Of a DNA stretch of 64,000 bases, positions 38,010 through 64,000 are shown one piece after another. Each line of letters starts with the position of its first letter. Position 1 is the first letter of the stretch. The stretch is taken from IMG/VR virus record IMGVR_UViG_3300014720_000001, positions 62,001 to 126,000 of that record. One strand, written 5' to 3'. The position numbers and the translations under genes were made by a program. The notes beneath the pieces are model-generated. The model had not been told where the DNA came from. It saw only the letters and a program-made list of their open reading frames with translations, and did no database searches.

Positions 38010-39824
38010 TCATACTTGTTGTGGTTGCAGGAGTTTCATTGACTTCGCGAACATGTGTGGATCAAGCTTGGGTGGCAGCGGCTTGGCGGGCGGAGCTTTG
38101 AGCGAGTTACCAACTGCCCCGGCGCCGTAACCAGCCGCGCCCATGAGCCCCGCGGCGCCAAGGCCCAGCAGCGTCCGGTTGCGGGCCATGAGATTCAGAC
38201 CCTTCTGGACGAGCGGCTTGTTGGTAATGCCAAGAATCTTCACGCCCGGCCGTGTTAATAGCGTGCTCGGCAAGACATCCATGTGCGAGAGCTGCGGTTT
38301 CACGGCGCCCACATCGTCAAGCACCTTTGAGACCATCGAGCCGCAGTGGTTGCCCCAGCAGGTCGAGCCTTGGCCGCGGCCGCCAATAAACGGAATCTTC
38401 TGCAGCCACGGAAACTTCCGGCGCAGCATGTTAATGCCCAGCACTTCTTTGGCTCCGGCACCAATGGCGGCCGTACTGGCGTAGCCCTTGTTCGTCTCTT
38501 TGTTTAATGACTTGATCAGCTGGTCGGTATCAATGTGATCGCCGGCCCGCGCATAGATCGTGCCGCGGGGCTTGCCGGAGTAATAACCGTCCGGAAACAG
38601 CTGCGACTTGTCGCGCATAGCATCGTCGTACACGTTATCAATGCCCAGAATCGAGTCGCCAGCGTTGAACTTGAACGGGCGTTTCTTGGCGTCGAGCCTG
38701 CCGGCCGCCATAGCGCGCCTGTTCTCCGCCAGCGCTTTTTGCAACACACTCAGACTGACTCCGTTTCGGGATGCAATCTCTTTTTGTGTAGCTTCCGGCA
38801 GCGTGTGCAGGATCTTGAATATCGGATCGTGCACCTCGTCGAGCATTGCGCCGCCGTGATGCAATGTCGGAATCAGCCGCTCGAACGCCTTGGGTTTAAA
38901 TAACTTTGAGCGGCGCAGCGCATTCGTCGGCATGCCCACTTCATCAATCGCTTTGGTAATTTCTTCAGCCAGCGCCGGCGAAGCTTTGGTGCCCCGCTGC
39001 CGAAATAAATCAGCCAATGCTTTGAGCCGGTCTTTCTTGGCCAGACTCTCGGGCGTATTAGGATTCACACCCAGCGCCCGCACGTTGTCCATGACTTTGC
39101 GCGCCTTGGCCTGCGGTGTGTTCTCAAAGAACTCGCGCAGGCGGCCTTTGGCTGGATATGTGCCGCCTGTGGGTGTCGTGCGCTCCGGCGTCAGAAACGT
39201 CTTGAAGTTTTTGACTAACTTATCGCGCTGGGCGACTAATTTACTGGTGTCAGCGCCCGTGGCTTTAGCTTCTTGGATCTGCCGCGACAGCGCCCACAGC
39301 CGGGCTTTCATCAGGCCGTACTTGTCGCCGCCGCCCTCGAAAGCCGTGTAGCGTGCGGTACGTTTTGCGGCGTCACGAATAAACTTGCGCCGATTACGGG
39401 CCAACGCCGGGCTGTAGACTTCGCCAGCGTCGTTGACCAAGAATGACAAGGCGGGTGGCCGGCCCCCTTCGGGCGTGTTCGTGAGCTTGAAAGGAGCTTG
39501 AATGTGCGGGCCGACCATTTGGCCGTGCATGCCCGGGCCGCCAGATGCTGCGCCTGAGCCCTGAATCAAGAAGTTCACCAAGCCGCCGTCGTTACTCTGC
39601 TGTAATCCAGACAGCCCAAAGTCACCGGGGCGAAGGGTCTTGAGCGCCTGCGCAACGTCTACATTGCCGTTGCCGAGCGTCCAGTCCGGCGCGTCTTTCA
39701 GCGCCTTGCGGTACTTGGGAAGCGTGCTGAGCAGGTATTCCAACAGGCTGAGCGTAGGTAGAGCTGCGCCCGCCGTGGCACCAATGGGCCGCAGATCGAC
39801 GCCGTTTTCGTCGCTTGGGGGCAT
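38010..39824 (-). CDS. Membrane-associated protein with a possible permuted papain-like (YiiX/YaeF-type) amidase domain
   Basis: LRPGDF...MHGQMV near the N-terminus; HCGSMVSKVL...VLPSTLL near the C-terminus; hydrophobic Gly-rich ends. Confidence 0.45.
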   Translation of the reverse strand: MPPSDENGVDLRPIGATAGAALPTLSLLEYLLSTLPKYRKALKDAPDWTLGNGNVDVAQALKTLRPGDFGLSGLQQSNDGGLVNFLIQGSGAASGGPGMHGQMVGPHIQAPFKLTNTPEGGRPPALSFLVNDAGEVYSPALARNRRKFIRDAAKRTARYTAFEGGGDKYGLMKARLWALSRQIQEAKATGADTSKLVAQRDKLVKNFKTFLTPERTTPTGGTYPAKGRLREFFENTPQAKARKVMDNVRALGVNPNTPESLAKKDRLKALADLFRQRGTKASPALAEEITKAIDEVGMPTNALRRSKLFKPKAFERLIPTLHHGGAMLDEVHDPIFKILHTLPEATQKEIASRNGVSLSVLQKALAENRRAMAAGRLDAKKRPFKFNAGDSILGIDNVYDDAMRDKSQLFPDGYYSGKPRGTIYARAGDHIDTDQLIKSLNKETNKGYASTAAIGAGAKEVLGINMLRRKFPWLQKIPFIGGRGQGSTCWGNHCGSMVSKVLDDVGAVKPQLSHMDVLPSTLLTRPGVKILGITNKPLVQKGLNLMARNRTLLGLGAAGLMGAAGYGAGAVGNSLKAPPAKPLPPKLDPHMFAKSMKLLQPQQV

Positions 39825-49985: not shown

Positions 49986-50606
49986 CTACTTCTTGATCAC
50001 CGTCGCGCCGTTCCACTTTATTCGCGTATTGCGCAAAACAGTACGCGTAGGAGCCGCCCGCGCAGCCGATCGCCGCTTCTTCGGCTTTCGAATGACGTCA
50101 AAACCGCGCTCTGACGACTCTGCAAAACTTTGCCACCGAGCCGTAACGCGCGACTTTTTCTTCTTATCCTCTGCGCGCTTGCGACTACGAAGAATCGGCG
50201 TCATGGGGTTGAGCTTGTACATATTCGGGGGCAGCGGCCACGGCTTGTTTTTATCGAACATGCCGGCTGCCCGCGATAACGTACTGGGGCAGTGCCATCG
50301 AATCTCGATTTTGTTGACAAAATCCCAGATTTTGATGATGCCTTTCCCCACCTGAAACGAGTAGTTCTTTCCCCAAAACGCTTTCAACGCTAGCGCCAAA
50401 ACACAGTGCTCCGGCGAACCCGGAATCGCGCTGTCGATCATCTTTTGCGTGATGTGGATATACAGCGGATCACGACTTAGAACGACGGTCCAGTCGTGCA
50501 GCGCCGGATAAGACGGCCCACACTGTTTAAACGGATGCTGCGTACCAGCCTTCGGGCGGCCGGCAGATTTCGAATTCTTTTCGATATTGCCTGATTTCCT
50601 CGTCAT
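49986..50606 (-). CDS. Basic hypothetical protein
   Basis: Start MTRKSG; Arg/Lys-rich C-terminus. Confidence 0.55.
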   Translation of the reverse strand: MTRKSGNIEKNSKSAGRPKAGTQHPFKQCGPSYPALHDWTVVLSRDPLYIHITQKMIDSAIPGSPEHCVLALALKAFWGKNYSFQVGKGIIKIWDFVNKIEIRWHCPSTLSRAAGMFDKNKPWPLPPNMYKLNPMTPILRSRKRAEDKKKKSRVTARWQSFAESSERGFDVIRKPKKRRSAARAAPTRTVLRNTRIKWNGATVIKK

Positions 50607-50817
50607 AGAACGATTCCCTTCGTTATGGAACCAACGGAACAACCCGTAACAACGTGTTACAGGCAAGAAGAAAAAACCGGGCTGGGCCATTTACGCCCCG
50701 GCCCATTATCTAAGCCCAGCTGCAGCTGTTCTTAGTACTCCCCCACGCCGAAGATCACGCCACGAGATTCCCCGCAGCGGTAGTCGGAGGCAAGGAGCGC
50801 CCGGTTAAAACAACGTT

Positions 50818-51008
50818 GCGCTCGGGTATGCTAGCCGAGCGCGGGATATAGGACCTCGGGTTCGCGCATACCATTCCACCCGAGTTTGTGTCCTACATCG
50901 GAACGTTGCGTGTTCTAAATGCCGATGCTGGGCACTACTCCAGCAGTTTTGGTCGCGTGCTCGGCATTCACACACGCGACGAGAGAAGGCACGCTAGCTA
51001 GTCGTGCC
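50818..51008 (-). ncRNA. Candidate structured RNA of unknown family
   Basis: Six consecutive stems with two loop-complementarity pairs in an ORF-free interval; strand inferred only from context. Confidence 0.45.
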
Positions 51009-51011
51009 CTC

Positions 51012-51042
51012 AAAGAAGCGCACAGGGGTCGAGCCTGTGCGC
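51012..51042 (-). terminator. Intrinsic terminator
   Basis: 9-bp stem GCGCACAGG/CCTGTGCGC followed by TTCTTT, directly after the stop of 51044..51451. Confidence 0.65.
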
Positions 51043-51043
51043 C

Positions 51044-51451
51044 TCATCGTGTGCAATGGCCAAGCTGGTGATGCACTTTGTAATAGGGCTGGTTGTGTTC
51101 CAGCATTACAATTTCTCGCCGCGCGGCAATTAGCACTGACTTGACCCACTCAGCCGACGGTAGTGTGCTGAATTCCGGCCGCAGATGATCAATTAACATA
51201 TCAATGCGTGCCGTAATTTCAGTGTTAGCGTCGTTGGGTTCTGGCAAGTCGTGGCGAGTAAACGTATTGTCGGATGCCGTAACATACGTTGTTGTCTTTG
51301 TTGGTACACCAGCGGCCGCAAATACGCTAGCTACCGCAGCTTTTCTCAGCGCTGTGTTTTCAGTCTTTAGCTCGTGTAATGCGACGCGTTGCATTGCGAC
51401 GATCAACCCGAGTGACGCTACACCAAACAACCCAAAAACCCAACCCCGCAT
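51044..51451 (-). CDS. Membrane-anchored hypothetical protein
   Basis: 135 aa; N-terminal TM segment. Confidence 0.6.
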   Translation of the reverse strand: MRGWVFGLFGVASLGLIVAMQRVALHELKTENTALRKAAVASVFAAAGVPTKTTTYVTASDNTFTRHDLPEPNDANTEITARIDMLIDHLRPEFSTLPSAEWVKSVLIAARREIVMLEHNQPYYKVHHQLGHCTR

Positions 51452-51486
51452 AAAGAGTCCTTTCTTTTTAAACGTTACATAACCAG

Positions 51487-51838
51487 TGGAGGCGGCGGGA
51501 ATCGAACCCGCGTCCTGTGATGTTTCCGTTCAGACGTCTACGTGTGTATCTGGTGAATTTGGTCTCACCTGAGTGTCACCCTACCAGCGCGGTAACAGTA
51601 CAGGCCAGCCCTGAACGAATTTAACCTGCGTAACAGAGCAATGGGCAGGCGAGTCGGATTTGGCGACCGCTAGACACTCCAACCGACTAGGAGTGGTTCG
51701 CGGGCTGCTGGTTTTACTCAGGCAGCGATGGCAAGAGTGTTGCCTACTAACATTTGATCGAGTTTTAACGTGGCCACCCGATCAACCACGACACGCAATC
51801 ATGAACTTCTACCATCCAGTCGATACCAGTACGCCCCC
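51487..51838 (-). ncRNA. ssrA: tmRNA
   Basis: 5' GGGGGCG pairs with 3' CGCCTCC-A including the G3-U alanine determinant; T-arm GCGGG-TTCGATT-CCCGC; pk1 (CGTGG/CCACG, TTGATCGGG/CTCGATCAA); tag ORF GNTLAIAA-stop at 51718-51744. Confidence 0.95.
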
Positions 51839-51847
51839 GTCAACGCA

Positions 51848-52030
51848 TTACGCCACTGCCTCTTCAGTAACCGGCGTTTCGCGCATTTTAACAAGCGCCT
51901 CCCGCCGATCAACCAGCGGAAGCGTGAAAAGCGCGTTGTACTCTTTCTTAGTGAGTTCCGTGTCACCAAAGAACTTAATTCCGTACATCAGCATGCCGCG
52001 GGAATCAAGCCAGTAACCAGTCGGCGCCAT
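51848..52030 (-). CDS. Small hypothetical protein
   Basis: 60 aa; GGAG SD. Confidence 0.45.
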   Translation of the reverse strand: MAPTGYWLDSRGMLMYGIKFFGDTELTKKEYNALFTLPLVDRREALVKMRETPVTEEAVA

Positions 52031-52316: not shown

Positions 52317-52390
52317 TAACCCGGGTGGGAGTCGAACCCACAACAAGTAGATCCTAAATCTACCGCCTCTGCCAATTGGGCTACCGAGTT
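52317..52390 (-). tRNA. trnL: tRNA-Leu(TAG), short variable loop
   Basis: AACTCGG/CCGGGTT acceptor stem; GTAGA-TT TAG GA-TCTAC; 5-nt variable loop. Confidence 0.9.
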
Positions 52391-52510
52391 GAACGTGGTT
52401 TATTCCGGTTGCACCACCACAAGGTTTTTTATCACACCGGACCTTTGCCTGCTGTATATCGTAGGGAGCGCAGCAGGCCGCGGATTCCCTTGAACGTGCC
52501 CTTGCGGGCA

Positions 52511-52583
52511 TGACCCCACGGGGATTCGAACCCCGGTAAACGGAACGAAAATCCGTTGTCCTAGACCTCTAGACGATGGGGCC
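52511..52583 (-). tRNA. trnE: tRNA-Glu(TTC)
   Basis: GGCCCCA/TGGGGTC acceptor stem; ACGGA-TT TTC GT-TCCGT. Confidence 0.95.
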
Positions 52584-52590
52584 GCCTCAG

Positions 52591-52902
52591 TTATTTAGCA
52601 GCTTCTTGGCTCCAAAACAACTGGGCGCGTTCAATGGCGGCCAGCATGCGCTTTCGCCCGACCGGGTTGGCCGAATGAATGCGCACCTCGATTGGCGACA
52701 GGCTACCCTTGTAGGCCGCTTCCTCGATGAACTTTGCGACGTCGTAACCCGTGCCGTTCTCTTCTGGGCCAAGATCGTGGTCCAGCGAAATCAGCGTGAT
52801 ACCGCCCACACGCAAAAGCCGAATGGCCGTTTCTGCTGTTTTGACGCAGCAGTCAAAGTCAGCCGGCTTGGGTCGCTCATCATCGAGCCAGAGTTTAACC
52901 AT
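52591..52902 (-). CDS. Cyclic-phosphate-processing receiver-like domain protein
   Basis: LWLDDERP...ISLDHDLG...TGYDVAKFI...IHSANPVG. Confidence 0.75.
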   Translation of the reverse strand: MVKLWLDDERPKPADFDCCVKTAETAIRLLRVGGITLISLDHDLGPEENGTGYDVAKFIEEAAYKGSLSPIEVRIHSANPVGRKRMLAAIERAQLFWSQEAAK

Positions 52903-53035
52903 AGTTAGCGCATTCCTTCTTTTCAAGCGTCCGCTCGGTCTTCCAAAACAAACGTTTTCCGAACTTTTTCATGTGCTTGTTCCAGCCCATGATCTTTGGT
53001 CGCACGTGCAGCAGTCCGCGCTTCTTCGTGGTCAT
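52895..53035 (-). CDS. Small basic protein
   Basis: 46 aa from MTTKKRG; AAGGAG SD. Confidence 0.5.
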   Translation of the reverse strand: MTTKKRGLLHVRPKIMGWNKHMKKFGKRLFWKTERTLEKKECANYG

Positions 53036-53060
53036 GTTGCTCCTTTGATAACAAAACCAA

Positions 53061-53133
<73 letters not shown>

Positions 53134-53198
53134 TCGCGTGGGTGGGGCGCCAAAGGCTTGGGCTACCTCCAGCGCCCCACCGTCAGCGAGTCTACGCT

Positions 53199-53549
53199 TC
53201 AGCGGTAGCGCTTGCACGCATACCACCGGCCATCCCTGCCACGCGCGACCCCTTGGTCTACGACCGCTCTGCCGCTATTGCTGTAGCAACAGTTGCCCAG
53301 CGCCTCGTCAGGCGAACGGCCCATGCCAACACCTTCCAGCCCTGAGTTACCGCCGTGGTGACCCATGCTGCAGCGGCTGGCCTGCAGCTCGGCTACGCCC
53401 TGTGCCGTGGCCGTAGATCCGCTGTAGGCGTACCCAGAATGAGTAGGCGTCGAGACCATTGGTGTCGTGTAGTAGCGACGACGTGGGGCAGCATGCGCAA
53501 CGCTGGCCAGCATCAAAACTGCAACGACACACGTGGAAAAACGGAACAT
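53199..53549 (-). CDS. Secreted minimal CAP/SCP-like protein
   Basis: Signal peptide; MGH...EGVG...C...GVA...WYAC pattern. Confidence 0.5.
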   Translation of the reverse strand: MFRFSTCVVAVLMLASVAHAAPRRRYYTTPMVSTPTHSGYAYSGSTATAQGVAELQASRCSMGHHGGNSGLEGVGMGRSPDEALGNCCYSNSGRAVVDQGVARGRDGRWYACKRYR

Positions 53550-53616
53550 AACGATCCTCCGTGACCCCGCTGCTGGTGTGCGCAGCGTGAAAAGAAACTA
53601 GCCCCACACCGGGCAG

Positions 53617-53690
53617 TAGGCGCAAAGGGACTCGAACCCCTAACCCCCTGCGTGTAAAGCAGGTGCTCTGACCAATTGAGCTATGCGCCT
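53617..53690 (-). tRNA. trnV: tRNA-Val(TAC)
   Basis: AGGCGCA/TGCGCCT acceptor stem; CCTGC-TT TAC AC-GCAGG. Confidence 0.95.
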
Positions 53691-53695
53691 AGGTT

Positions 53696-54081
53696 TTATT
53701 TGTACTTGCCGCGCCACTTGTCGAAGCGCAGCCTGTACCAATTCCACCTGTCGTACACCCGCAACCGCTGCCGGCGGAACCAGCGGCGGAACCGCAACCC
53801 CGGCGTGTTCAGGCCGTTCTCGTTGAGGTACTTCCTGTACGACCACTGAACAGCCTCGTCTGACCCGGCGTCGGTAACCGCGATGTCACACGCATCGCAG
53901 CGCAGGCAGGGCACGCCGTATACCGGCACCTGATGCACTTTGCCGTCAATGCGCATGTCGTACACGTCTTTAAACGTATACGCACGAAACGGCTCGCCAC
54001 ACTGATAACAACAAATCGGCCTGTATACGCAAGCCGGATTTTTTAACAGATTAGGCGACAGAATATTGTTGTCGGTCAACA
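53696..54081 (-). CDS. YgiT/MqsA-type zinc-finger protein (start uncertain)
   Basis: CYQCGE...VPCLRCDAC; Arg-rich C-terminus. Confidence 0.5.
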
Positions 54082-54102
54082 GAAACTCCTTTCTACTGCG
54101 AC

Positions 54103-54175
54103 TAGGACCGGTGGGACTCGAACCCACACTTGAAGGATTTTAAGTCCTTTGCCTCTGCCATTGGGCTACGATCCC
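54103..54175 (-). tRNA. trnL: tRNA-Leu(TAA), short variable loop
   Basis: GGGATCG/CGGTCCT acceptor stem; AAGGA-CT TAA AA-TCCTT; 5-nt variable loop. Confidence 0.92.
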
Positions 54176-54185
54176 CCGATGCTTT

Positions 54186-54557
54186 TCACACCAGCTCGGC
54201 TTTTTTCTCTTCCGGCGCAGGATACTGCTCAGGATGCGCGATGTGCCGAAACCGGGCTTGCCCTGTGCGGCTGTGCATGCCGAGGATATCTCTGCTGACA
54301 ACGGCTTTCTCGAAATACTCAAACGCCCGTTCCACTTTCAAGAAATCGGCGTAAGACACAGATCCGCCGTCGTCGATCTTACGCCGGAGTTCTTGGCCGA
54401 TCTCGATCAGCTTGTTTAAGTCTTCGCCGATACGGCCGTCGTAGTACTCCGCAGAACTCTCGTTTTCATCGTGTCCGTGTGTTCCCATTCCAAGCGTACC
54501 TCTGATTGCCCATTTGGCACCACCACTGCTGCCCGTCGTTCCAATAAACGGGTACAC
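54186..54557 (-). CDS. Hypothetical protein (start may be at about 54488)
   Basis: ORF between tRNAs; overlaps the upstream gene. Confidence 0.45.
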   Translation of the reverse strand: MYPFIGTTGSSGGAKWAIRGTLGMGTHGHDENESSAEYYDGRIGEDLNKLIEIGQELRRKIDDGGSVSYADFLKVERAFEYFEKAVVSRDILGMHSRTGQARFRHIAHPEQYPAPEEKKAELV

Positions 54558-54789
54558 CAGCCGTAGCGGGATTCATCTCGTCGTTCCCGGTCCACATGTA
54601 CCATTGCCCCTGCTCACAGCGCCACCAACGACCTTCGTGATACACCACGTAAGCCTGCTGCTGGGGTTGCTGCATTTGCTGCACACGTGCCTGAACACGA
54701 TCTCGTAGCTGCTCGACGCCCGTTTGAATAACAGGTTGCACGACCGGCGTCAAAATACCAACAAGCAGCGCGATTAGCCAATTCATCAT
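54466..54789 (-). CDS. Small Trp/Gln-rich exported protein
   Basis: MMNWLIALLVGIL signal; two similar YxxGxWW repeats; AAGGAGG SD. Confidence 0.55.
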   Translation of the reverse strand: MMNWLIALLVGILTPVVQPVIQTGVEQLRDRVQARVQQMQQPQQQAYVVYHEGRWWRCEQGQWYMWTGNDEMNPATAGVPVYWNDGQQWWCQMGNQRYAWNGNTRTR

Positions 54790-54826
54790 TTCCTCCTTGA
54801 AAGATGACAATTAAACAATCGACCAC

Positions 54827-54899
54827 TGGGCCCTGTGGGACTCGAACCCACGACCAAAGGATTAAAAGTCCCTTGCTCTACCAACTGAGCTAAAGGCCC
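54827..54899 (-). tRNA. trnK: tRNA-Lys(TTT)
   Basis: GGGCCTT/AGGGCCC acceptor stem; AGGGA-CT TTT AA-TCCTT. Confidence 0.95.
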
Positions 54900-55926: not shown

Positions 55927-57069
55927 TTAAGAGTGGGCGCAAACGGGCCCAAAGCAGCGTTTATCGTTGCCCAAATCTGTCGGCAACGTATACCAGCCTT
56001 TGTCATAGAGCTGATAGATCTTTTGAAACGCTTCATCGTACATGGCGCCACAGGCTTCAAGGCTATACGTACGCCGGGCGTTCTTGGCGATAGCGGCCCG
56101 ATCCAGCGAATGTACCCGTTTGAGCGCGTGCAGCCAGTCCGCCAGTGTTTTGCAGCGGAAACCATTGACGCCATGCTGGACGGTCTCAGTGAATGCGCCG
56201 TAGTCAGTAGAGATGAGCGGCGTCCCACACAGCAGGCCCTCGACGCCCGACCCACCAAATGGCTCGATAAAGTCTGTGGGCATCAACGAGCAAATGGCGT
56301 TGCGCATAAACTCGCTGCGCTCGGTGCCGGCAATCGGGCCCCTGTAGATGATGTTGGGGTGCGCCCAGCGTTCGTGGTCGCCTTGGCCCGCCAGCACGAT
56401 CTTCGCCTGCTTGTCTACAAGATGCAGATTCTTGGCTAGCTCATAGATCGTGTCCAGCCCTTTGCACTTATCAATGCGGCCGAGGAACGCATAGTACTTT
56501 CCGGGTGCAAAGCTGGGTTGCCAGTCTTCGATATCAAAATAATTGGGGATCACGAACTCATAGTGCGCACCCTGTCGGCCGTCTTTACCGGCGTGATAGT
56601 GCCGCCACGCATAGCTTTCAAATATCTTAATCGTGCCGTCTACCAGCGCCGGATATCCGATGCCAGTTTCAACGTGAGTGTTAGCGGGGAAATCGGCCAG
56701 CAAGCGCGAATGTGCGTGCCCGAACGGGTGGCAAATAATGTCTCGCGGCTTGACGCGCTGCTGCATAGCGGGCACAAGCCTGTCTTCAAATAACTTGTGG
56801 TGCGGCGCGCCGACTGTAGCGTTGTCGCCGTGAAACGCTTTCTTGTCGCGGTTGCCCAGCATGTTTTCAAACTCGTCATGCGCGAGCATTTCTACTTTTT
56901 CATCAGCAAGACTTTCACTCCCGGCGTTGGCGTACTCAATGACGCGGTAGCCGTACATGCGCATCATCTTGGAAAAGCGCAGGGCTTTACCGGTGAACGC
57001 GCAGTGCGAATACGCAGCTGTGTGCCGCGTGTGAAAGATACCAACCAGATGAAGTGTCGGCCGTGACAT
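55927..57069 (-). CDS. GT-B glycosyltransferase (GT4-like)
   Basis: FLGRIDKCKG; EPFGGSGVEGLLCGTPLISTDYGAFTETVQHGVNGF. Confidence 0.88.
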   Translation of the reverse strand: MSRPTLHLVGIFHTRHTAAYSHCAFTGKALRFSKMMRMYGYRVIEYANAGSESLADEKVEMLAHDEFENMLGNRDKKAFHGDNATVGAPHHKLFEDRLVPAMQQRVKPRDIICHPFGHAHSRLLADFPANTHVETGIGYPALVDGTIKIFESYAWRHYHAGKDGRQGAHYEFVIPNYFDIEDWQPSFAPGKYYAFLGRIDKCKGLDTIYELAKNLHLVDKQAKIVLAGQGDHERWAHPNIIYRGPIAGTERSEFMRNAICSLMPTDFIEPFGGSGVEGLLCGTPLISTDYGAFTETVQHGVNGFRCKTLADWLHALKRVHSLDRAAIAKNARRTYSLEACGAMYDEAFQKIYQLYDKGWYTLPTDLGNDKRCFGPVCAHS

Positions 57070-57838: not shown

Positions 57839-58201
57839 TTACCCGTAGAGTTTAAATATCTTGCGCTGTTTGGGTGTCGTATCCAACGTTGTGCGGGGAG
57901 CCGGCTGTGGCTGCGCCGGCGGTATTACGCGCGTCACGTGCGCAGCCAGCCGCTCGCGAAACTGCAGGCTGACTATCTCGTCATGCCGCCTACGCGCTTC
58001 GGCGCGAAAGTGCTCCATTCGATTCTTTCGCTCTGCCAGCCACTGCCGTTCGCGCATGAAGTCAAAGCGGAGCCACAAGAAATACAGCGCGATAAGAACC
58101 ATCGCGCCAATAAACCCAACAGGGTCAGGTGTTCTGGCCGGCGTGGTTGGCAACGGCTGCTCAACGCGCGCGACTGTTGCTGAGTCCGTGTTTAGTTGCA
58201 T
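57839..58201 (-). CDS. Membrane-anchored hypothetical protein
   Basis: 120 aa; one TM segment. Confidence 0.55.
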   Translation of the reverse strand: MQLNTDSATVARVEQPLPTTPARTPDPVGFIGAMVLIALYFLWLRFDFMRERQWLAERKNRMEHFRAEARRRHDEIVSLQFRERLAAHVTRVIPPAQPQPAPRTTLDTTPKQRKIFKLYG

Positions 58202-58769
58202 AACACGCGGCGCAGGCCGGTAGATACTTTTCTTCGCAACCGAGTTCTACAGATGGGCCGGCGAGAGTTGGCTGCCCGTCGCACATTTTAAGATTGAACA
58301 CAGCTTTTCGCAAGCAGAATGTACAGATTGTTTTGATTTCTTCAATAGCGTCTGCCAACTCCAAAAGGCGCTGTGAAGCTGGGAAGAGTTGGCGACGAAA
58401 GTCTGTTCGCAGGCCGTAGCAAATAACCGGGATTCCGTCTCGGTTATACGGCGGATACGTGCAAGCGTGGGCGACGTTATGCAGCTGGTCGACGGCTTCT
58501 ACTGATAAGAACTGCGCCTCGTCTACCAGCAGGCATACGACGTCGTTAAGGTCGGGTAACTGGCATGGCCCGCTGGCTGGAACAAGTATGTCAGCCGGGG
58601 CCTCCAGCCCTGCGCGCGTTTTAATGACATCTTTGCCGAAACGCACATCCAGCTCGGGCTTCAGTAGTAGCACCTTTTTGTTTTGCTGCCGGTAGTTGTG
58701 AGCTACAGCCAGCAGATTCATTGTCTTTGCGCTACCGACGGTCCCGTATCGAAAATAAAGCTTGGCCAT
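58161..58769 (-). CDS. tdk: Thymidine kinase
   Basis: YGTVGSAKT, VDEAQF, YGLRTDF, C..C...KY..C..C. Confidence 0.93.
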   Translation of the reverse strand: MAKLYFRYGTVGSAKTMNLLAVAHNYRQQNKKVLLLKPELDVRFGKDVIKTRAGLEAPADILVPASGPCQLPDLNDVVCLLVDEAQFLSVEAVDQLHNVAHACTYPPYNRDGIPVICYGLRTDFRRQLFPASQRLLELADAIEEIKTICTFCLRKAVFNLKMCDGQPTLAGPSVELGCEEKYLPACAACYATKHGLSNSRAR

Positions 58770-58772
58770 AAA

Positions 58773-59258
58773 TTACGGATTTGAGGTATCTGGGCACACA
58801 TTTATTGCAACAGGAGATTCGCCCGCAGTTCCGTCAAACAAAATTTCGCCTGTCGTCGGGCGTGTAACTTTGAGTTTTGCAATTCCGCGATGGCAGTCCG
58901 AGTATACGCAGTCAAGTTGTGCATAAAGAATGCAGCAGTCTTCAGCGTCTTTGGTAATGTCTTCTGCTTGTTGTTTGCTGATTGTGTGTCGCGAGAATTT
59001 TCGTAAACCGTCGCTGCCGTTGTTAAGATTGACATTGCCGATCTCAACACGTTCTCCGCCTTGAGCAAAAATGTAAAGCGTAAAACTTGCGCGATCGCAA
59101 ATGTGGCCCTCTTCGGGGCCGGCGGAGTACTCTAGCTCGACGCCTTCAATACCGCAACCACAACAGCAATCTTTGTCGCTTAGTTCGCCCACAATGAGCG
59201 TCGGCGAGCTGCAATCTGTCACGCGCAGTCGCCCGCCTATAGTAATTAACTTTGCCAT
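58773..59258 (-). CDS. Cys-rich hypothetical protein, possibly tail-associated
   Basis: Start MAKLITIGG overlaps the stop of the LamG gene (TAATG). Confidence 0.6.
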   Translation of the reverse strand: MAKLITIGGRLRVTDCSSPTLIVGELSDKDCCCGCGIEGVELEYSAGPEEGHICDRASFTLYIFAQGGERVEIGNVNLNNGSDGLRKFSRHTISKQQAEDITKDAEDCCILYAQLDCVYSDCHRGIAKLKVTRPTTGEILFDGTAGESPVAINVCPDTSNP

Positions 59259-62200
59259 TAGATGATCGTCAAAAGCGCTGCGCGGCTGTATCCAATGTTT
59301 GTCGTGCCGCAGCCCGCGCGGACACGATATTGATTTCCGTTGTCGGCACCGGGAGTGAGCGCTGTATCTGTAACTGACGCGCCAGTTGCAAACGGAATAT
59401 CTTGCCAACCACCATCAAGGCCCTTCTTTTGCCATTGATATGTAAACGACGAATAGGTTTGCCCAGTTGTTCGCCCAATACCGGTAGCGGACGCCGTAAA
59501 TGTAACCGAACCCGTGACACTAGAATCAATCACCGTATCTTGCGGCTCTGTGGTAAACGAAATGCTCAACGGTTCGACCGTTAACAAAGCGGCGTCGCTG
59601 ACGGCTGTTTGAAAACCGCTTTTTGCTTCAATGCGGTAATACGTTGCATTGTCTGCAAACGTCAAATTTGTTAGCGCAAGTGTAACGCTCAGAGGCTGCG
59701 CAAACTGCAGCGGATATGTTTGAATGGTTTTCCAGTTGTAACCGTCGTTGTAGTACTGCCACGAGCCGGCTGGATTTCCGGCGCCATCAGCTTCATGAAT
59801 AATCCAATAGCCGTCATACCAAAACAAACAATACATATTGTCAGCTTTGCGATAAAACTGTTTACCGTTGTACGCGTTGTTTGAGCTAACCGACGGATAA
59901 TACGTGCCATTGATAGCGCGTTTACCAGCTGCTGTTACTTGCAACGCGTACAGGTTTGTGCCATTGTTTAATGCACTTGGCGGCGTGAAATTTGCCGTAT
60001 ATCTTGCCGCGCGGGTAATCCGCAATTCGTCGGTGTAATCGTTGGCCGCGGCAAAAATAGTTGTGGTACGTTCTGTAGTAGTGTCGCCGACTTGTCCGGA
60101 GTATGTGAAATCGCCAATGGACAAGCCATTAACATAACAACGAATAACAGAAGACGAAGACGCCACATTGCGCACAAGCGCTATGTGTGTCCATGTCTGC
60201 GCGCTGACATGTTGCGCGCCCGTCAGCGTTTGCGGAGAACCGCCGTTGATCTGCAGATACAGTTTTGAGTTCTCTAAATACAAGTCAGTTAAATTGACGC
60301 CCAGCGTGCCGCTAGAGAACAAATAACGTTTTGTTGTTGTGGCGTTGAAATAAAACCACGCTTCAACGGTAAAACTACTCGGCAGAGTAATGTCGCCGGA
60401 AAAATTGACAGATGCGTTTGAAAGACTGTACGTGCCATACTTTTTATTTGCTGACGTCAATCCGCCCGGGCCGTTGATTACCCCATAAAATCGATTGTTA
60501 CTGATATCACTCAAGCCGGTTTCAAAATTAGTAAATAGCGCGACAGCACTTGCCAGCGCGTCTGGGTCAGCCCACGTAAGCTGAGCGCCCAGTGTCGGTG
60601 GCGTAAAATTTGCGGTGTAACGACATACGCCGTTTGTAATTCTGACTTGCGCCATCTGCCCTTCAAAACCACGACTGGTGGCGCCCCATACGCCAGCGTA
60701 ATCGCCAATTTCTAGCGTGTTACCGGCAGTTACAGGATTTGTATATGTCGTACCGTAAACGACCTGTCCGTTAAAAAAAATTTGAAAAACAGCTCCGCTG
60801 CGTGTTACCGCAATGTGCACCCACGTATTTAACGGCGGCGTAATACCGGTGTCGGCACCCATGGCCCAATAATTGCCGCCCCACCAATACGACATTGGCG
60901 AATAAAAGTACAGCCGATTGTTACTTTCCAAAAGAAGAATCCAACCAGTTACGTCACTGTTGGAATGCGTCATTACAAGCGCTTGATACCCTTTGCTATT
61001 GTTTGAAAATTTAAACCAACCCTCGATCGTAAAATCGCCGTTAAACGTGAAGTTTGAGCCGCTGGATACTGTCAATGCGTCGTCTGTGCCGTCAAAAGTA
61101 CCCGCTCCGCCGTTGCTGCCGTCAGGTAGAACAGTTGTTGTTACCTTTAAATTGCCGCCGCGCACTAACGTGTTTGGCGCTGGTGACACATCTGTAAACG
61201 TCAAAGAGTTATTGGACCCGGTCATTGGTACCAGTAATGCAACTTGATTAAAAGCCGGGTCAAGATTGCTGGTCGGGAACGCGGCGGTTGGCGGAGAAAA
61301 CGACGCCGGATAACGCGCCACGCCGATTGTCAACCGTAAGTCGTCGATGTAGCCGTCAAAATACGGATTTGAGCCGGCGTTGTCCCAACGTTTTCCGACG
61401 TTGAAGTTAAGCGTCGGGCTGTTGATGCTGCTACCCGTTACACCAAAACCAACCACTACGCCGTCGTAAAACAGATAAAAAAAGTTTCCCTCGCGCACAA
61501 CAGCGACGTGCACCCATTGATTCAACGGCAAATCTGTTCCGGCTGTGATATGAATGTGCCACCAACTGCCGTTGTAGCTTGCAAAAAACAATCGGCGACC
61601 TAGGTCTTCAAAGCCGTTTGGGCCGTGAAAGCCGAACGCAATACTAATAGGCGTGCCGGCGTGTTGTTCGCTGATGATGCACCCGCTCATTGTATCCGAC
61701 CGCATGTACACCCACGCTTCAATCGTGAACGGGGCGTCGCTCAGCGCCATATTGTTATTTGTAGCTGTCGTAACGACGCCGGTGCTACCGTTAAATTCAG
61801 CGCTGGCGGCCCCGTACTTTTTAAAGTTTGTGCGAATATTTGCACCCGACGTCGCCTGCAGTGCGCGCGCGTTCACAGATAAATCCACAAACCCGGTATC
61901 CATCGTCATCAACAGGGCGACATTTTTGAAGTACGGGTCGCCTGATGAGTTTGTTGGAACCGCCGTCGTTACTTGCTTGAGATACGGTACAGGCGCCGGA
62001 GCGTTTGCATACTGCGGATCGCCCCACCCCGTTTGCGGATCATCGGCGATCCACGGGTTGCCGGTAATAGGCGTGTCAGAGTTTTTATCGGCCTTTTGCC
62101 ACGAGACCGTAATCGGATCTTCCCAACGGCCGGTTCTATAGGCATTAGCCGTAAATGTCGCGCTAAACGTGCACGACGCGTTTACGTCTGACGGATTTTG

Positions 62201-62365
62201 CCCGATGCCAAAACCAGTCGTTTCGGGCGCGAGTACTGTCGGCCAGCTGGAACGAAGAAGGGCGTCGTTCGCTTCTTGCAGACCCCATACGCCGTTCGCG
62301 CCAGAACGTTTCGGCAACGAGGTATCACGCGCACCGAAGCGCCCGCCAACACGACCGCGACTCAT
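59258..62365 (-). CDS. Tail-fibre/receptor-binding-like protein with three LamG (concanavalin A-like) domains and a C-terminal Ig-like domain
   Basis: Three FT(I/V)E(A/G)W...W(V/T)H(V/I)A(V/L)(V/T)R...R repeats; FTTEPQD...YQWQK...YRVR Ig-like domain. Confidence 0.85.
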   Translation of the reverse strand: MSRGRVGGRFGARDTSLPKRSGANGVWGLQEANDALLRSSWPTVLAPETTGFGIGQNPSDVNASCTFSATFTANAYRTGRWEDPITVSWQKADKNSDTPITGNPWIADDPQTGWGDPQYANAPAPVPYLKQVTTAVPTNSSGDPYFKNVALLMTMDTGFVDLSVNARALQATSGANIRTNFKKYGAASAEFNGSTGVVTTATNNNMALSDAPFTIEAWVYMRSDTMSGCIISEQHAGTPISIAFGFHGPNGFEDLGRRLFFASYNGSWWHIHITAGTDLPLNQWVHVAVVREGNFFYLFYDGVVVGFGVTGSSINSPTLNFNVGKRWDNAGSNPYFDGYIDDLRLTIGVARYPASFSPPTAAFPTSNLDPAFNQVALLVPMTGSNNSLTFTDVSPAPNTLVRGGNLKVTTTVLPDGSNGGAGTFDGTDDALTVSSGSNFTFNGDFTIEGWFKFSNNSKGYQALVMTHSNSDVTGWILLLESNNRLYFYSPMSYWWGGNYWAMGADTGITPPLNTWVHIAVTRSGAVFQIFFNGQVVYGTTYTNPVTAGNTLEIGDYAGVWGATSRGFEGQMAQVRITNGVCRYTANFTPPTLGAQLTWADPDALASAVALFTNFETGLSDISNNRFYGVINGPGGLTSANKKYGTYSLSNASVNFSGDITLPSSFTVEAWFYFNATTTKRYLFSSGTLGVNLTDLYLENSKLYLQINGGSPQTLTGAQHVSAQTWTHIALVRNVASSSSVIRCYVNGLSIGDFTYSGQVGDTTTERTTTIFAAANDYTDELRITRAARYTANFTPPSALNNGTNLYALQVTAAGKRAINGTYYPSVSSNNAYNGKQFYRKADNMYCLFWYDGYWIIHEADGAGNPAGSWQYYNDGYNWKTIQTYPLQFAQPLSVTLALTNLTFADNATYYRIEAKSGFQTAVSDAALLTVEPLSISFTTEPQDTVIDSSVTGSVTFTASATGIGRTTGQTYSSFTYQWQKKGLDGGWQDIPFATGASVTDTALTPGADNGNQYRVRAGCGTTNIGYSRAALLTII

Positions 62366-63369
62366 TAGGCGATCTCCTCATACGAGCAAATGTAGTCGAG
62401 CCGGTTATCCGCACTGGCAAAACAACTGATGCGGTCACCTTCTTCTAAATAAAGCGGATTCTCTTTTGATAATACAGCTAACGTGCCGCCGGCCGGAACT
62501 GTGATTCTGTGCGCTATACGGCTTTCCGCGCCGATGAACGCACTCTGCGACGTTTTGATAACAGCCCCGCCAATACCTGTAATTGCATGCGGCGTCAACA
62601 CGCTGTCCGTAAATGTCGTGGACCCATTTGCGCCGTCGGCGTGCATAAGCAGCACAGTGTTGGCGTTGTTATCTGGAAACGGCGCTGCCGGCGGCGTAAA
62701 GTCACCGGAGTAGCGCGCAATCGTGCTGACGCGCAACTCTTCAAGATAACCATTCGCGTATTGTCCGTCCATGAGGCGGCCAATACGTGGATTATTATTG
62801 TTTGCCGTGACTGTGCTTGTATTAACAAACGACACGCCGGTATCACGTATGCCGTCAACATAAAAACTTATGATGTTACTGGCACGACAAATAGCGACAT
62901 GCGTCCAACGCTGCAGAAAGATTGGGATTGTTGAGTATTGTGTGCCGGGCGCATCAATCCACGCAAGGCGATAAAACCCGTTGTTTGTTACGTAAAATAA
63001 ATAACCCGTTTGATTTGCTGCCGCACGTGTTTCAAGCAAACAAAAATGATTAGGAAGTGAATCTAAGTACACCCATCCTTCAATTGTGAAATCGCCGGTA
63101 AACGTAAGCCCGGTATTGCTGTTCATCGTTAGATATCCGCTGTAGCCGTCAAAATACGCGGATGATGCGCCAGTAACGCCGCCGCGGCGCAGAACGGCAA
63201 TGACATCAGCATTTGCGGTGCCCGTAGTGTTACTGATTAACAGCGTGCCGACACGGAGCGATTTAAAACTGCCGCTTGGATTCAACAGCACATCAACGCC
63301 GTCAGCCGGAATTCTGCCTGTTACTGTCTTACCGTAAATCGCTGTTGTAGAAACAATGTTTGTCGGCAT
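62365..63369 (-). CDS. LamG domain-containing protein
   Basis: Start MPTNIVST (AGGA SD); FTIEGW, WTHVAICR, YLEELRVS. Confidence 0.8.
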   Translation of the reverse strand: MPTNIVSTTAIYGKTVTGRIPADGVDVLLNPSGSFKSLRVGTLLISNTTGTANADVIAVLRRGGVTGASSAYFDGYSGYLTMNSNTGLTFTGDFTIEGWVYLDSLPNHFCLLETRAAANQTGYLFYVTNNGFYRLAWIDAPGTQYSTIPIFLQRWTHVAICRASNIISFYVDGIRDTGVSFVNTSTVTANNNNPRIGRLMDGQYANGYLEELRVSTIARYSGDFTPPAAPFPDNNANTVLLMHADGANGSTTFTDSVLTPHAITGIGGAVIKTSQSAFIGAESRIAHRITVPAGGTLAVLSKENPLYLEEGDRISCFASADNRLDYICSYEEIA

Positions 63370-63370
63370 G

Positions 63371-64000
63371 TCATCCTCCGAGAATAAGTGCAGCCCAAAT
63401 TGAAGGCGGTCCGGGCGGGCCTGATGGGCCGCCGCTAGGACCTGTTGGCCCGGCAGGTCCTGTTGGACCAATCGGCCCAGACTCACCGGTTAAACCGCGT
63501 GCGGCATATACAGGAACACCGCCAATTAAAATAACAGAAGGGTCAGTAGTGGCTTCAACCTCGGGTGGCGGGCCTGCGACGCCTGTCGCGCCCGTTGGAC
63601 CAGTGGGTCCGGTAGCGCCTTGCGCAGCATATACCAACACGCCGTCAACATAAATAGAATCGGACGTCGGGCCTGCTGTAACTGTAAGCCCGGGACCTGT
63701 CGCGCCGGTCGCTCCGGTCGGGCCGTCGATGCCTGTAGCGCCAGTTACACCTGCACCTGTGGCGCCGGTCGCCCCGGCCACACCTGTTGAACCGCGTAAA
63801 CCGCTCGGACCAATTAATCCTGATGGTCCTGTTACGCCAGTCGCGCCTTTCGTACCGGTGGCGCCGATAGCGCCGGATATACCTATAGGCCCGCTGGGTC
63901 CAGCCGGACCTGTCGCGCCGCGCTCACCTTGAATGCCTTGCGGACCAGCTGGCCCAACAATACCGGTCGCACCAACGGGGCCTTGAATGCCGATAACGCC
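63371..64000 (-). CDS. Collagen-like (Gly-X-Y) fibre protein, partial (start beyond the window)
   Basis: The frame is open to 64000 with continuous GXY triplets (GATGATG, GPTGPTG). Confidence 0.85.

What the first reader, a model, noticed from the sequence alone, without database searches (positions are those of the whole stretch)
50700..51008. Dense hairpin array with loop complementarities next to the tmRNA locus
Seen in an ORF-free interval: stems at 50818-50825/50835-50842 (8 bp), 50849-50860/50879-50895 (6+6 bp with a bulge), 50896-50901/50922-50927, 50926-50931/50940-50945, 50952-50959/50973-50980 (8 bp) and 50988-50993/51003-51008. The first two loops are complementary (GGTATGC 50825-50831 / GCATACC 50866-50872). 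The loop of the fifth stem (TCGGCATT 50961-50968) is complementary to AATGCCGA (50918-50925), which competes with the third stem. Inference: a pseudoknotted ncRNA or a switchable 5' leader for 49986-50606.
Basis: partly seen in the sequence, partly recalled or inferred. Interest (0 to 1): 0.6.

Follow-up and report, generated by a model that had tools for sequence, protein, structure and literature searches.

The report
Conserved structured RNA beside phage tmRNA
Next to the tmRNA gene of a 205-kb freshwater phage lies a previously undescribed, about 245-base two-domain folded RNA, kept by compensating mutations in twelve related phages, whose function is unknown.

Summary
The region folds better than shuffles, and better on the minus strand, which carries every gene here (z -4.5 against -2.3).

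Comparison with 11 other distinct copies from about 200-kb virus records redraws the feature. The conserved unit is window 50909 to 50665, minus strand.
That pairing covaries.
Its closing helix runs straight into a U tract.

On the model-fitted alignment, 18 of 64 pairs change on both sides, against 6.8 in shuffles. No Rfam family matches.

The element always follows a phage tmRNA on the same strand, in four copies within 2-4 nt of the CCA end. The gene after it differs between relatives.

A pseudoknotted ncRNA is supported. A switchable leader for 49986-50606 is not. The function is inferred only, because no transcript data could be obtained.

The parts
50665..50909 (-). The whole conserved structured RNA element, about 245 nt. 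It has a 5' three-way-junction domain and a 3' four-way-junction domain that ends in a U tract.
   Evidence: Covariance model R1 scores 193-254 bits in 12 distinct copies. It is a single copy in the window's own genome.
50902..50909 (-). P0 5' strand. It pairs with 50810-50817 and closes the 5' domain.
   Evidence: A perfect 7-9 bp Watson-Crick helix is present in 12 of 12 copies. The inner end covaries: U-A pairs in one group, G-C in the other.
50849..50895 (-).
   Evidence: The outer G-C pairs become A-U in L128. One inner G-C becomes C-G in L128.
50818..50842 (-).
   Evidence: Two pairs change on both sides in 3 of 10 sequences. 98.5% of cells are paired (helix 4).
50866..50872 (-). Loop of H2 that pairs with the loop of H1 (50825-50831). 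This is a kissing-loop pseudoknot, or else a helix alternative to H1 and H2.
   Evidence: Two U-A pairs become C-G in the L002/L010 lineage (also L139), in the same register.
50810..50817 (-). P0 3' strand.
50799..50806 (-). P1 5' strand. It pairs with 50675-50682 and closes the four-way junction.
   Evidence: 98.8% of cells are paired. The helix is nearly invariant, so it is uninformative for covariation (helix 5). It is also in the single-sequence MFE.
50737..50798 (-). P2-P3-P4 long arm, with two conserved internal loops and a 4-nt apical loop.
   Evidence: P2, P3 and P4 each have 2 pairs that change on both sides, and 98.6-100% of cells are paired. Several G-U pairs exist only on this strand (helices 6-8).
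50710..50735 (-). P5 hairpin with a palindromic 12-nt tip.
   Evidence: The base-stem pair U-A becomes C-G in 7 of the 10 aligned rows. The tip pair C-G becomes U-A in L015 and L140.
50683..50705 (-). P6 hairpin with a conserved 9-11 nt loop. It abuts the P1 3' strand.
   Evidence: The fourth pair is C-G, U-A or U-G in the curated table. The rows are partly misaligned in A7, so the count understates it.
50665..50682 (-). P1 3' strand followed at once by a U-rich tract: a terminator-like 3' end.
   Evidence: At least 6 U in the 8 nt after the GC-rich part of the P1 3' strand (its own two closing U included), in 11 of 11 copies tabulated and by eye in L140. The simple terminator scan does not call it, because the 'loop' is a whole junction.
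50908..50981 (-). Lineage-specific spacer hairpin.
   Evidence: MFE. It is 93% identical in L004 and absent from all other relatives. One compensatory change against L004 can be read.
50985..51011 (-).
   Evidence: It is present with a different sequence but the same pairing in L004, L012, L018 and L040. It is absent in L002, L010, L128 and L140.
51013..51483 (-). A 471-nt insertion found only in the window, between the tmRNA and its trailing hairpin. It holds ORF 51044-51451 (135 aa, no family) and hairpin 51018-51042.
   Evidence: In the alignment with L004 the tmRNA CCA end runs straight into the hairpin. No family match and no relative in viral contigs.
51484..51838 (-). Phage tmRNA gene, the constant upstream neighbour of the element.
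   Evidence: Rfam RF00023, 144.8 bits. The same arrangement holds in every relative scanned.
49986..50606 (-). Downstream 206-aa gene of unknown function. Its 5' UTR has its own conserved hairpin at 50646-50660.
   Evidence: No Pfam, PHROGs or Atlas family. Homologues are 69-77% identical. UTR hairpin compensatory changes are visible.

Best explanation
Window 50909-50665, minus strand, encodes a non-coding RNA of a family not in Rfam.

Structure (shown):
- The 5' domain is a junction closed by helix P0. It carries two hairpins whose loops pair with each other.
- The 3' domain is a four-way junction. Its closing helix P1 is followed directly by a U tract.

Mechanism (inferred):
1. The RNA is transcribed together with the phage tmRNA from the tRNA/tmRNA cluster.
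2. Its 5' end is set free by the cut that matures the tmRNA 3' end.
3. Its 3' end is made by intrinsic termination at P1 plus the U tract.
4. The product is a compact stable RNA that acts in trans, probably as a protein- or ribosome-binding partner in the phage's handling of host translation. It would resemble the orphan stable RNAs C and D of the phage T4 tRNA cluster.
For: Structure:
- 12 distinct copies were found.
- On the model-fitted alignment of 10 of them, 91.2% of cells are paired.
- 18 of 64 pairs change on both sides, against 6.8 +/- 1.7 in shuffles (0 of 500 reach it). Slid controls give at most 4.
- P0 is perfect in 12 of 12 copies and covaries.
- The single-sequence MFE reproduces the consensus fold.

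Strand:
- The minus strand folds at -107.3 kcal/mol and the plus strand at -88.5.
- The G-U pairs in P2 and P4 are valid only on the minus strand.

Not coding: ORF frames are not conserved.

Link to the tmRNA:
- A tmRNA lies directly upstream on the same strand in all 9 distinct copies that Rfam scanned; a tmRNA 3' end precedes the element in L010 and L012 and in L138, the duplicate of L040, where Rfam called none.
- The P0 5' strand starts 2-4 nt after the CCA end in four copies, which leaves no room for a separate promoter.
- The element is kept beside two diverged tmRNA types.
- It is absent from 115 other viral loci that have a tmRNA-like 3' end.

Not tied to the next gene: gene order after the element differs between relatives.

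3' end: the U tract is conserved in all copies.

Precedent: T4 RNAC and RNAD are described as RNAs 'of yet unknown functions' (PMC9697503).
Against: - There are no transcript data.
- The copies come from one phage clade with few independent lineages, so some covariation counts repeat single events.
- The alignment used for counting was fitted to the model.
- In the window an inserted ORF with its own terminator-like hairpin (51018-51042) lies between the tmRNA and the element. This could lower read-through transcription.
- A terminator stem that encloses a 130-nt junction is atypical, and the simple scan did not call it.
- No target or partner was found. Duplex prediction with the tmRNA is no better than with shuffled sequence. 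The phage has no SmpB.
Confidence: 0.5

Rival explanations
1. A factor- or ligand-responsive terminator, riboswitch-like. Folding of one or both domains would decide whether P1 closes and stops polymerase. That would gate read-through from the strongly transcribed tRNA/tmRNA cluster into the protein genes behind it.
For: - The element ends in a helix plus U tract and is always followed by same-strand ORFs.
- The 5' domain has the general layout of a junction with two kissing hairpins, as in purine aptamers (recalled, not tested beyond Rfam).
- The P6 loop resembles a purine-aptamer loop (recalled).
- The complexity exceeds what a plain terminator needs.
Against: - No Rfam riboswitch model hits at E up to 10.
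- The junction strand between P0 and H2 is variable and accepts 20-40 nt insertions, which is unlike a ligand pocket.
- I recognised no alternative antiterminator pairing.
- The genes downstream differ between relatives and have no known function.
Confidence: 0.2
2. A cis-acting 3' module of the tmRNA gene. This structured trailer would guide or protect tmRNA 3'-end maturation and end the operon, with no life of its own after cleavage.
For: The element sits strictly next to the tmRNA 3' end, within 2-4 nt in four copies. It ends at a terminator-like site. It persists beside two tmRNA types.
Against: - The distance to the CCA end ranges from 2 to 113 nt in relatives. In the window it is about 575 nt, with a whole ORF in between. 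A processing guide would be expected at a fixed distance.
- 115 other viral loci with a tmRNA-like 3' end do without it.
- Eleven conserved helices (P0, H2 outer and inner, H1, the loop-loop pairing, P1-P6) are far more than trailers normally have.
Confidence: 0.17
3. One reading: a switchable 5' leader that controls 49986-50606.
For: The element lies upstream of that gene in the window and in six of the eleven other copies. Alternative pairings exist in the window, for example stem 3 against P0.
Against: - A conserved helix plus U tract lies between the element and the gene.
- The gene has its own conserved UTR hairpin.
- In L004, L016, L018, L040 and L128 another ORF follows the element.
- Stem 3 is not kept in the closest relative.
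Confidence: 0.05
4. A DNA-level feature (replication origin, packaging site or protein-binding palindromes), or chance hairpins in a spacer.
For: The region has dense inverted repeats. Some are true DNA palindromes, namely the P0 3' strand and the P5 tip.
Against: - G-U pairs and the strand asymmetry of folding energy point to RNA.
- Compensatory changes keep pairing, not sequence.
- The palindrome in P0 is lost in the group with the G-C version.
- The 8-bp palindrome has only 6 copies in the genome.
Confidence: 0.03

Closest known systems
Phage T4 stable RNAs C and D (rnaC, rnaD) of the tRNA gene cluster
   Same: They are small stable non-coding RNAs encoded at the end of a phage tRNA cluster. 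By recalled knowledge they are made from the same transcripts as the tRNAs. Their function is still unknown (PMC9697503).
   Different: No sequence or structure relation was tested, because no model is available. T4 has no tmRNA. The present RNA is larger, has two domains and a kissing-loop pseudoknot, and is tied to the tmRNA.
Large orphan structured RNAs found near tRNA genes in phages and prophages (GOLLD, ROOL)
   Same: They are complex, covariation-supported RNAs of unknown function, often next to tRNA genes in phage DNA and partly of lake origin (recalled knowledge).
   Different: No hit to any Rfam family at E up to 10, and the GOLLD and ROOL models should be among them. This RNA is about 245 nt, against about 580-800 nt.
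Purine-type riboswitch aptamers (three-way junction with two hairpins joined by loop-loop contacts)
   Same: The 5' domain has a closing helix, two hairpins and a loop-loop interaction. A terminator-like 3' end follows.
   Different: - The loop-loop contact here is a 6-7 bp Watson-Crick helix.
- The junction strands are variable.
- A 140-nt four-way junction sits where an expression platform would be.
- No Rfam riboswitch family, purine included, reaches E 10.
Intrinsic (Rho-independent) terminators
   Same: A GC-rich helix is followed at once by a U tract, with an A-rich stretch 5' of the helix.
   Different: The helix closes a whole four-way junction of about 115 nt instead of a 3-8 nt loop.

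Membership tests
Any Rfam 15 family | Covariance-model score at or above the family's gathering score | tested here: not met
   There are no gathering-level hits in 50500-51200. At E up to 10 only two plant or animal miRNA models match by chance. The same holds in L128 and L004.
Permuted (two-piece) tmRNA, RF04321 | Score of at least 47 bits across the acceptor and coding pieces | tested here: not met
   The hits score 19-22 bits. They start in the ordinary tmRNA's own 3' end and run into the element. The upstream tmRNA is already complete, covering model positions 1-374.
tRNA or tRNA-like gene | Cloverleaf with a 7-nt anticodon loop and a T-loop, recognised by ARAGORN or RF00005 | tested here: not met
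   There is no ARAGORN or Rfam tRNA call in 50665-50909. The 3' domain has four helices with tRNA-like spacing, but the loops are of the wrong size.
Intrinsic terminator | U-rich tract directly after a GC-rich stem | tested here: met
   The P1 3' strand is followed by at least 6 U in 8 nt in all copies.
Intrinsic terminator | Simple hairpin with a short loop | tested here: not met
   P1 encloses P2-P6, and the scan with a loop of 3-8 nt does not report it.
Intrinsic terminator | Transcripts actually end there | not testable with these tools
Riboswitch (any class) | Ligand-dependent alternative folding, with highly conserved junction nucleotides | tested here: inconclusive
   No Rfam riboswitch model matches. 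The junction between P0 and H2 is variable. Ligand binding cannot be tested here.
Structured non-coding RNA (general) | Base pairs kept by compensatory changes above controls | tested here: met
   18 pairs change on both sides against 6.8 +/- 1.7 in shuffles (0 of 500 reach it). Slid controls give at most 4. P0 covaries.
Structured non-coding RNA (general) | No conserved reading frame | tested here: met
   Small ORFs differ in frame, start and length between copies.
T4 RNA C/D | Sequence or structure homology | not tested
The likeness is one of genomic setting only.

The most novel reading that the evidence does not exclude
The RNA is a dedicated partner of the phage tmRNA. This second RNA, made from the same precursor, would work with or modulate trans-translation or ribosome rescue during infection, for example by binding host SmpB, ribosomes or a tmRNA-targeting defence. 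Alternatively, it senses a cellular signal to gate the tRNA/tmRNA operon.
Probability: 0.15. Interest if true: 0.8.

Novelty: new variant of a known kind. Interest (0 to 1): 0.5.

Why it matters
Why phages carry tmRNA genes is poorly understood. An RNA that has stayed attached to the tmRNA gene through sequence divergence, insertions and changes in gene order is a concrete lead on that question.

It also adds a compact, well-defined motif to the small set of orphan phage RNAs linked to translation genes. The motif has eleven conserved helices (P0, H2 outer and inner, H1, P1-P6), one of which is the covarying loop-loop pairing. At about 245 nt it is small enough for probing, structure determination and pull-downs.

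Tried and rejected
- **Hairpin 51018-51042 as a duplicated tmRNA 3' end (an att-like scar).** The alignment score is no better than shuffles, with 369 of 1000 as good.
- **The 8-bp palindrome in P0 as a genome-wide regulatory motif.** It has only 6 copies in 204.6 kb. No other copy of the element or the spacer exists in the genome.
- **Pairing of the element with its tmRNA.** Duplex energies are within the range for shuffled sequence, and the method was uninformative for sequences this long (one search timed out).
- **Cultured-phage relatives.** None were found by DNA search of the locus or by protein search with ORF 38010-39824.
- **Neighbouring proteins.** The 206-aa gene has no Pfam, PHROGs or Atlas family. 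The 135-aa ORF has no Pfam or PHROGs family and no viral relative.
- **A small conserved ORF inside the element.** Rejected.
- **Literature.** No description of an RNA next to a phage tmRNA was found. A catalogue of IMG/VR structured-RNA candidates exists (PMC10690425), but its tables are not held, so overlap could not be checked.
- **Taxon of the MAG that holds a copy.** The tool does not report it.

Full report
**Setting**

The window is bases 62001-126000 of a 204,621-bp virus record with direct terminal repeats. All long ORFs in the window lie on the minus strand. Minus-strand tRNA genes lie at 52317-54899, and a tmRNA gene at 51484-51838 scores 144.8 bits against Rfam RF00023. The finding lies between two minus-strand ORFs, 51044-51451 and 49986-50606.

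**Checking the observation**

| Stretch | Strand | Energy (kcal/mol) | z-score |
|---|---|---|---|
| 50691-51043 | minus | -159.8 (shuffles -135.3 +/- 5.4) | -4.54 |
| 50691-51043 | plus | -137.0 | -2.33 |
| 50663-50899 (most of the conserved element) | minus | -107.3 | -3.95 |
| 50663-50899 (most of the conserved element) | plus | -88.5 | -2.58 |
| 50896-51012 (spacer) | minus | -50.5 | -4.1 |

The observation therefore stands, and the folding strand is the one that carries the genes. Rfam gives nothing in 50500-51200 even at E up to 10, apart from two chance miRNA matches.

**Relatives**

Three routes gave 11 further distinct copies, 12 in all counting the window:
- contigs that encode homologues of the downstream protein;
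- DNA patterns taken from invariant stretches;
- a scan for tmRNA-like 3' ends in viral contigs.

Where the record is complete, the copies come from virus records of about 194-205 kb. The one hit among prokaryote genomes is a 5-kb contig of a MAG, identical to a viral copy.

The covariance model R1 finds each copy at 193-254 bits. It finds a single copy in the window's own genome. It finds nothing in 115 other viral loci that have a tmRNA-like 3' end.

**What is conserved**

The conserved unit runs from 50909 down to 50665 on the minus strand.

The 5' domain consists of:
- helix P0, 50902-50909 with 50810-50817;

- P1, 50799-50806 with 50675-50682;
- a long P2-P3-P4 arm, 50737-50798;
- P5, 50710-50735;
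- P6, 50683-50705;
- a U-rich tract that follows P1 at once, 50665-50676.

The single-sequence MFE of the window reproduces this fold.

**Covariation**

The count was made on the model-fitted alignment of 10 sequences, with the loop-loop pairing written as a pseudoknot:
- 91.2% of cells are paired.
- 18 of 64 pairs change on both sides, against 6.8 +/- 1.7 in shuffles. None of 500 shuffles reaches the observed number.
- Sliding the partners by 1-3 columns gives at most 4 such pairs.

Every helix except the nearly invariant P1 has at least one compensatory pair.

The loop-loop pairing keeps its register in the L002/L010 lineage (also L139) through two U-A to C-G double changes. The H1 stem around it is also rebuilt in that lineage.

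P0 is a perfect 7-9 bp helix in 12 of 12 copies. Its inner end is U-A in one group and G-C in the other.

L128, the most diverged copy, turns the outer G-C pairs of H2 into A-U and inverts one inner pair.

Three caveats apply. The copies belong to one phage clade with few independent lineages. The alignment leans towards the model. P6 is partly misaligned in it, so I read P6 from a curated table instead.

G-U pairs in P2 and P4 are valid only on the minus strand, and the two strands differ in folding energy. Both facts argue for RNA rather than DNA structure. Small ORFs in the element change frame and start between copies, so it is not coding.

**Genomic logic**

In every copy scanned by Rfam a complete tmRNA gene lies directly upstream on the same strand; for L010, L012 and L138 only the tmRNA 3' end was seen. 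The P0 5' strand begins at these distances from the tmRNA CCA end:

| Distance from the CCA end | Copies |
|---|---|
| 2-4 nt | 4 |
| 36-38 nt | 3 |
| 104-113 nt | 4 |
| about 575 nt | the window only |

In the window a 471-nt insertion separates the two (51013-51483). It holds a 135-aa ORF with no family plus a hairpin, and it is absent from the closest relative, L004.

The element is kept beside two diverged tmRNA types.

The gene after it is not constant. The 206-aa gene follows directly in the window and six other copies. In the other five copies a different small ORF comes first.

Nucleotide identity of the element to relatives is 77-89%. That is at or slightly above the identity of the 206-aa gene (72-81%). 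The spacer is shared only with L004.

- Stem 6 is a hairpin that follows the tmRNA CCA end in seven copies, with different sequence but kept pairing.
- Stems 4 and 5 and the second complementarity belong to a long hairpin at 50908-50981. It exists only in the window and L004. In the MFE the 8-nt complementarity is simply one of its helices.
- Stem 3 is lost in L004, and in the window its loop contains the P0 5' strand.

**Interpretation**

Shown:
- a conserved, two-domain, pseudoknotted RNA structure on the minus strand;
- no match to any Rfam family;
- physical linkage to the phage tmRNA gene;
- a helix plus U tract at the 3' end.

Inferred:
- co-transcription with the tmRNA, since four copies leave no room for a promoter;
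- release of the 5' end by tmRNA 3' maturation;
- intrinsic termination at P1;
- action in trans as a stable RNA.

The nearest precedent in setting is the pair of stable RNAs C and D of the T4 tRNA cluster, still 'of yet unknown functions' (PMC9697503). I found no partner: duplex prediction with the tmRNA is uninformative, and the phage has no SmpB.

The rivals are a factor-responsive terminator that gates read-through into the following genes, and a purely cis tmRNA maturation and termination module. Both remain open. A DNA-level or chance origin conflicts with the covariation and the strand asymmetry.

**Novelty**

No Rfam family matches. No cultured-phage record contains the locus. I found no paper that describes an RNA attached to a phage tmRNA. 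A published catalogue of IMG/VR RNA candidates could contain it, but its tables are not available here.

I rate it a new variant of a known kind: an orphan structured RNA of a phage translation-gene cluster. It is of moderate interest. The interest would rise sharply if a functional tie to trans-translation were shown.

Noticed in passing
window 51013-51483: A 471-nt cassette is inserted exactly at the tmRNA CCA end. It holds a 135-aa ORF with a hydrophobic N-terminus and no family match, plus a terminator-like hairpin. The closest relative, L004, lacks it, so it looks like a recently acquired moron.
   Followed up: partly
window 51484-51838: ARAGORN does not call the tmRNA that Rfam scores at 144.8 bits, so no tag peptide was obtained. 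The phage genome has no SmpB gene.
   Followed up: partly
tmRNA genes of window, L004, L002, L015, L139, L140 versus L012, L040, L128: Two diverged tmRNA types occur among these related phages. One group is about 90% identical to the window's tmRNA over its full length. The other aligns over only about 80-100 nt. The downstream element is kept in both, which suggests mosaic exchange of the tmRNA.
   Followed up: partly
window 50646-50660: A hairpin in the 5' UTR of gene 49986-50606 keeps its stem through compensatory changes in L002, L012 and L015. Its loop repeats the core of the P0 sequence.
   Followed up: no
L016 4241-4341, L040 830-930, L138 2516-2616, L140 8884-8984, L018 3959-4059: tRNA matches 101 nt long in relatives suggest a tRNA with an intron or another insertion of about 28 nt in this phage group.
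   Followed up: no
window 51885-51912 (minus strand): This is the only good sigma-70-like site near the cluster (TG-extended -10). It lies about 47 nt upstream of the tmRNA 5' end and is a candidate tmRNA promoter. The number of such sites is no higher than in shuffles.
   Followed up: no
L015, L016, L040, L139, L140, L002, L010, between P0 5' strand and H2: A variable insertion of 20-40 nt, partly a shared GC-rich hairpin, sits in the junction of the 5' domain. The window, L004, L012, L018 and L128 lack it.
   Followed up: partly
window 55927-57069, 58161-58769, 59258-63486: Nearby genes encode a group 1 glycosyltransferase, a thymidine kinase and two large proteins with laminin-G/concanavalin-like lectin domains, which are possible fibre or adhesin proteins.
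   Followed up: no
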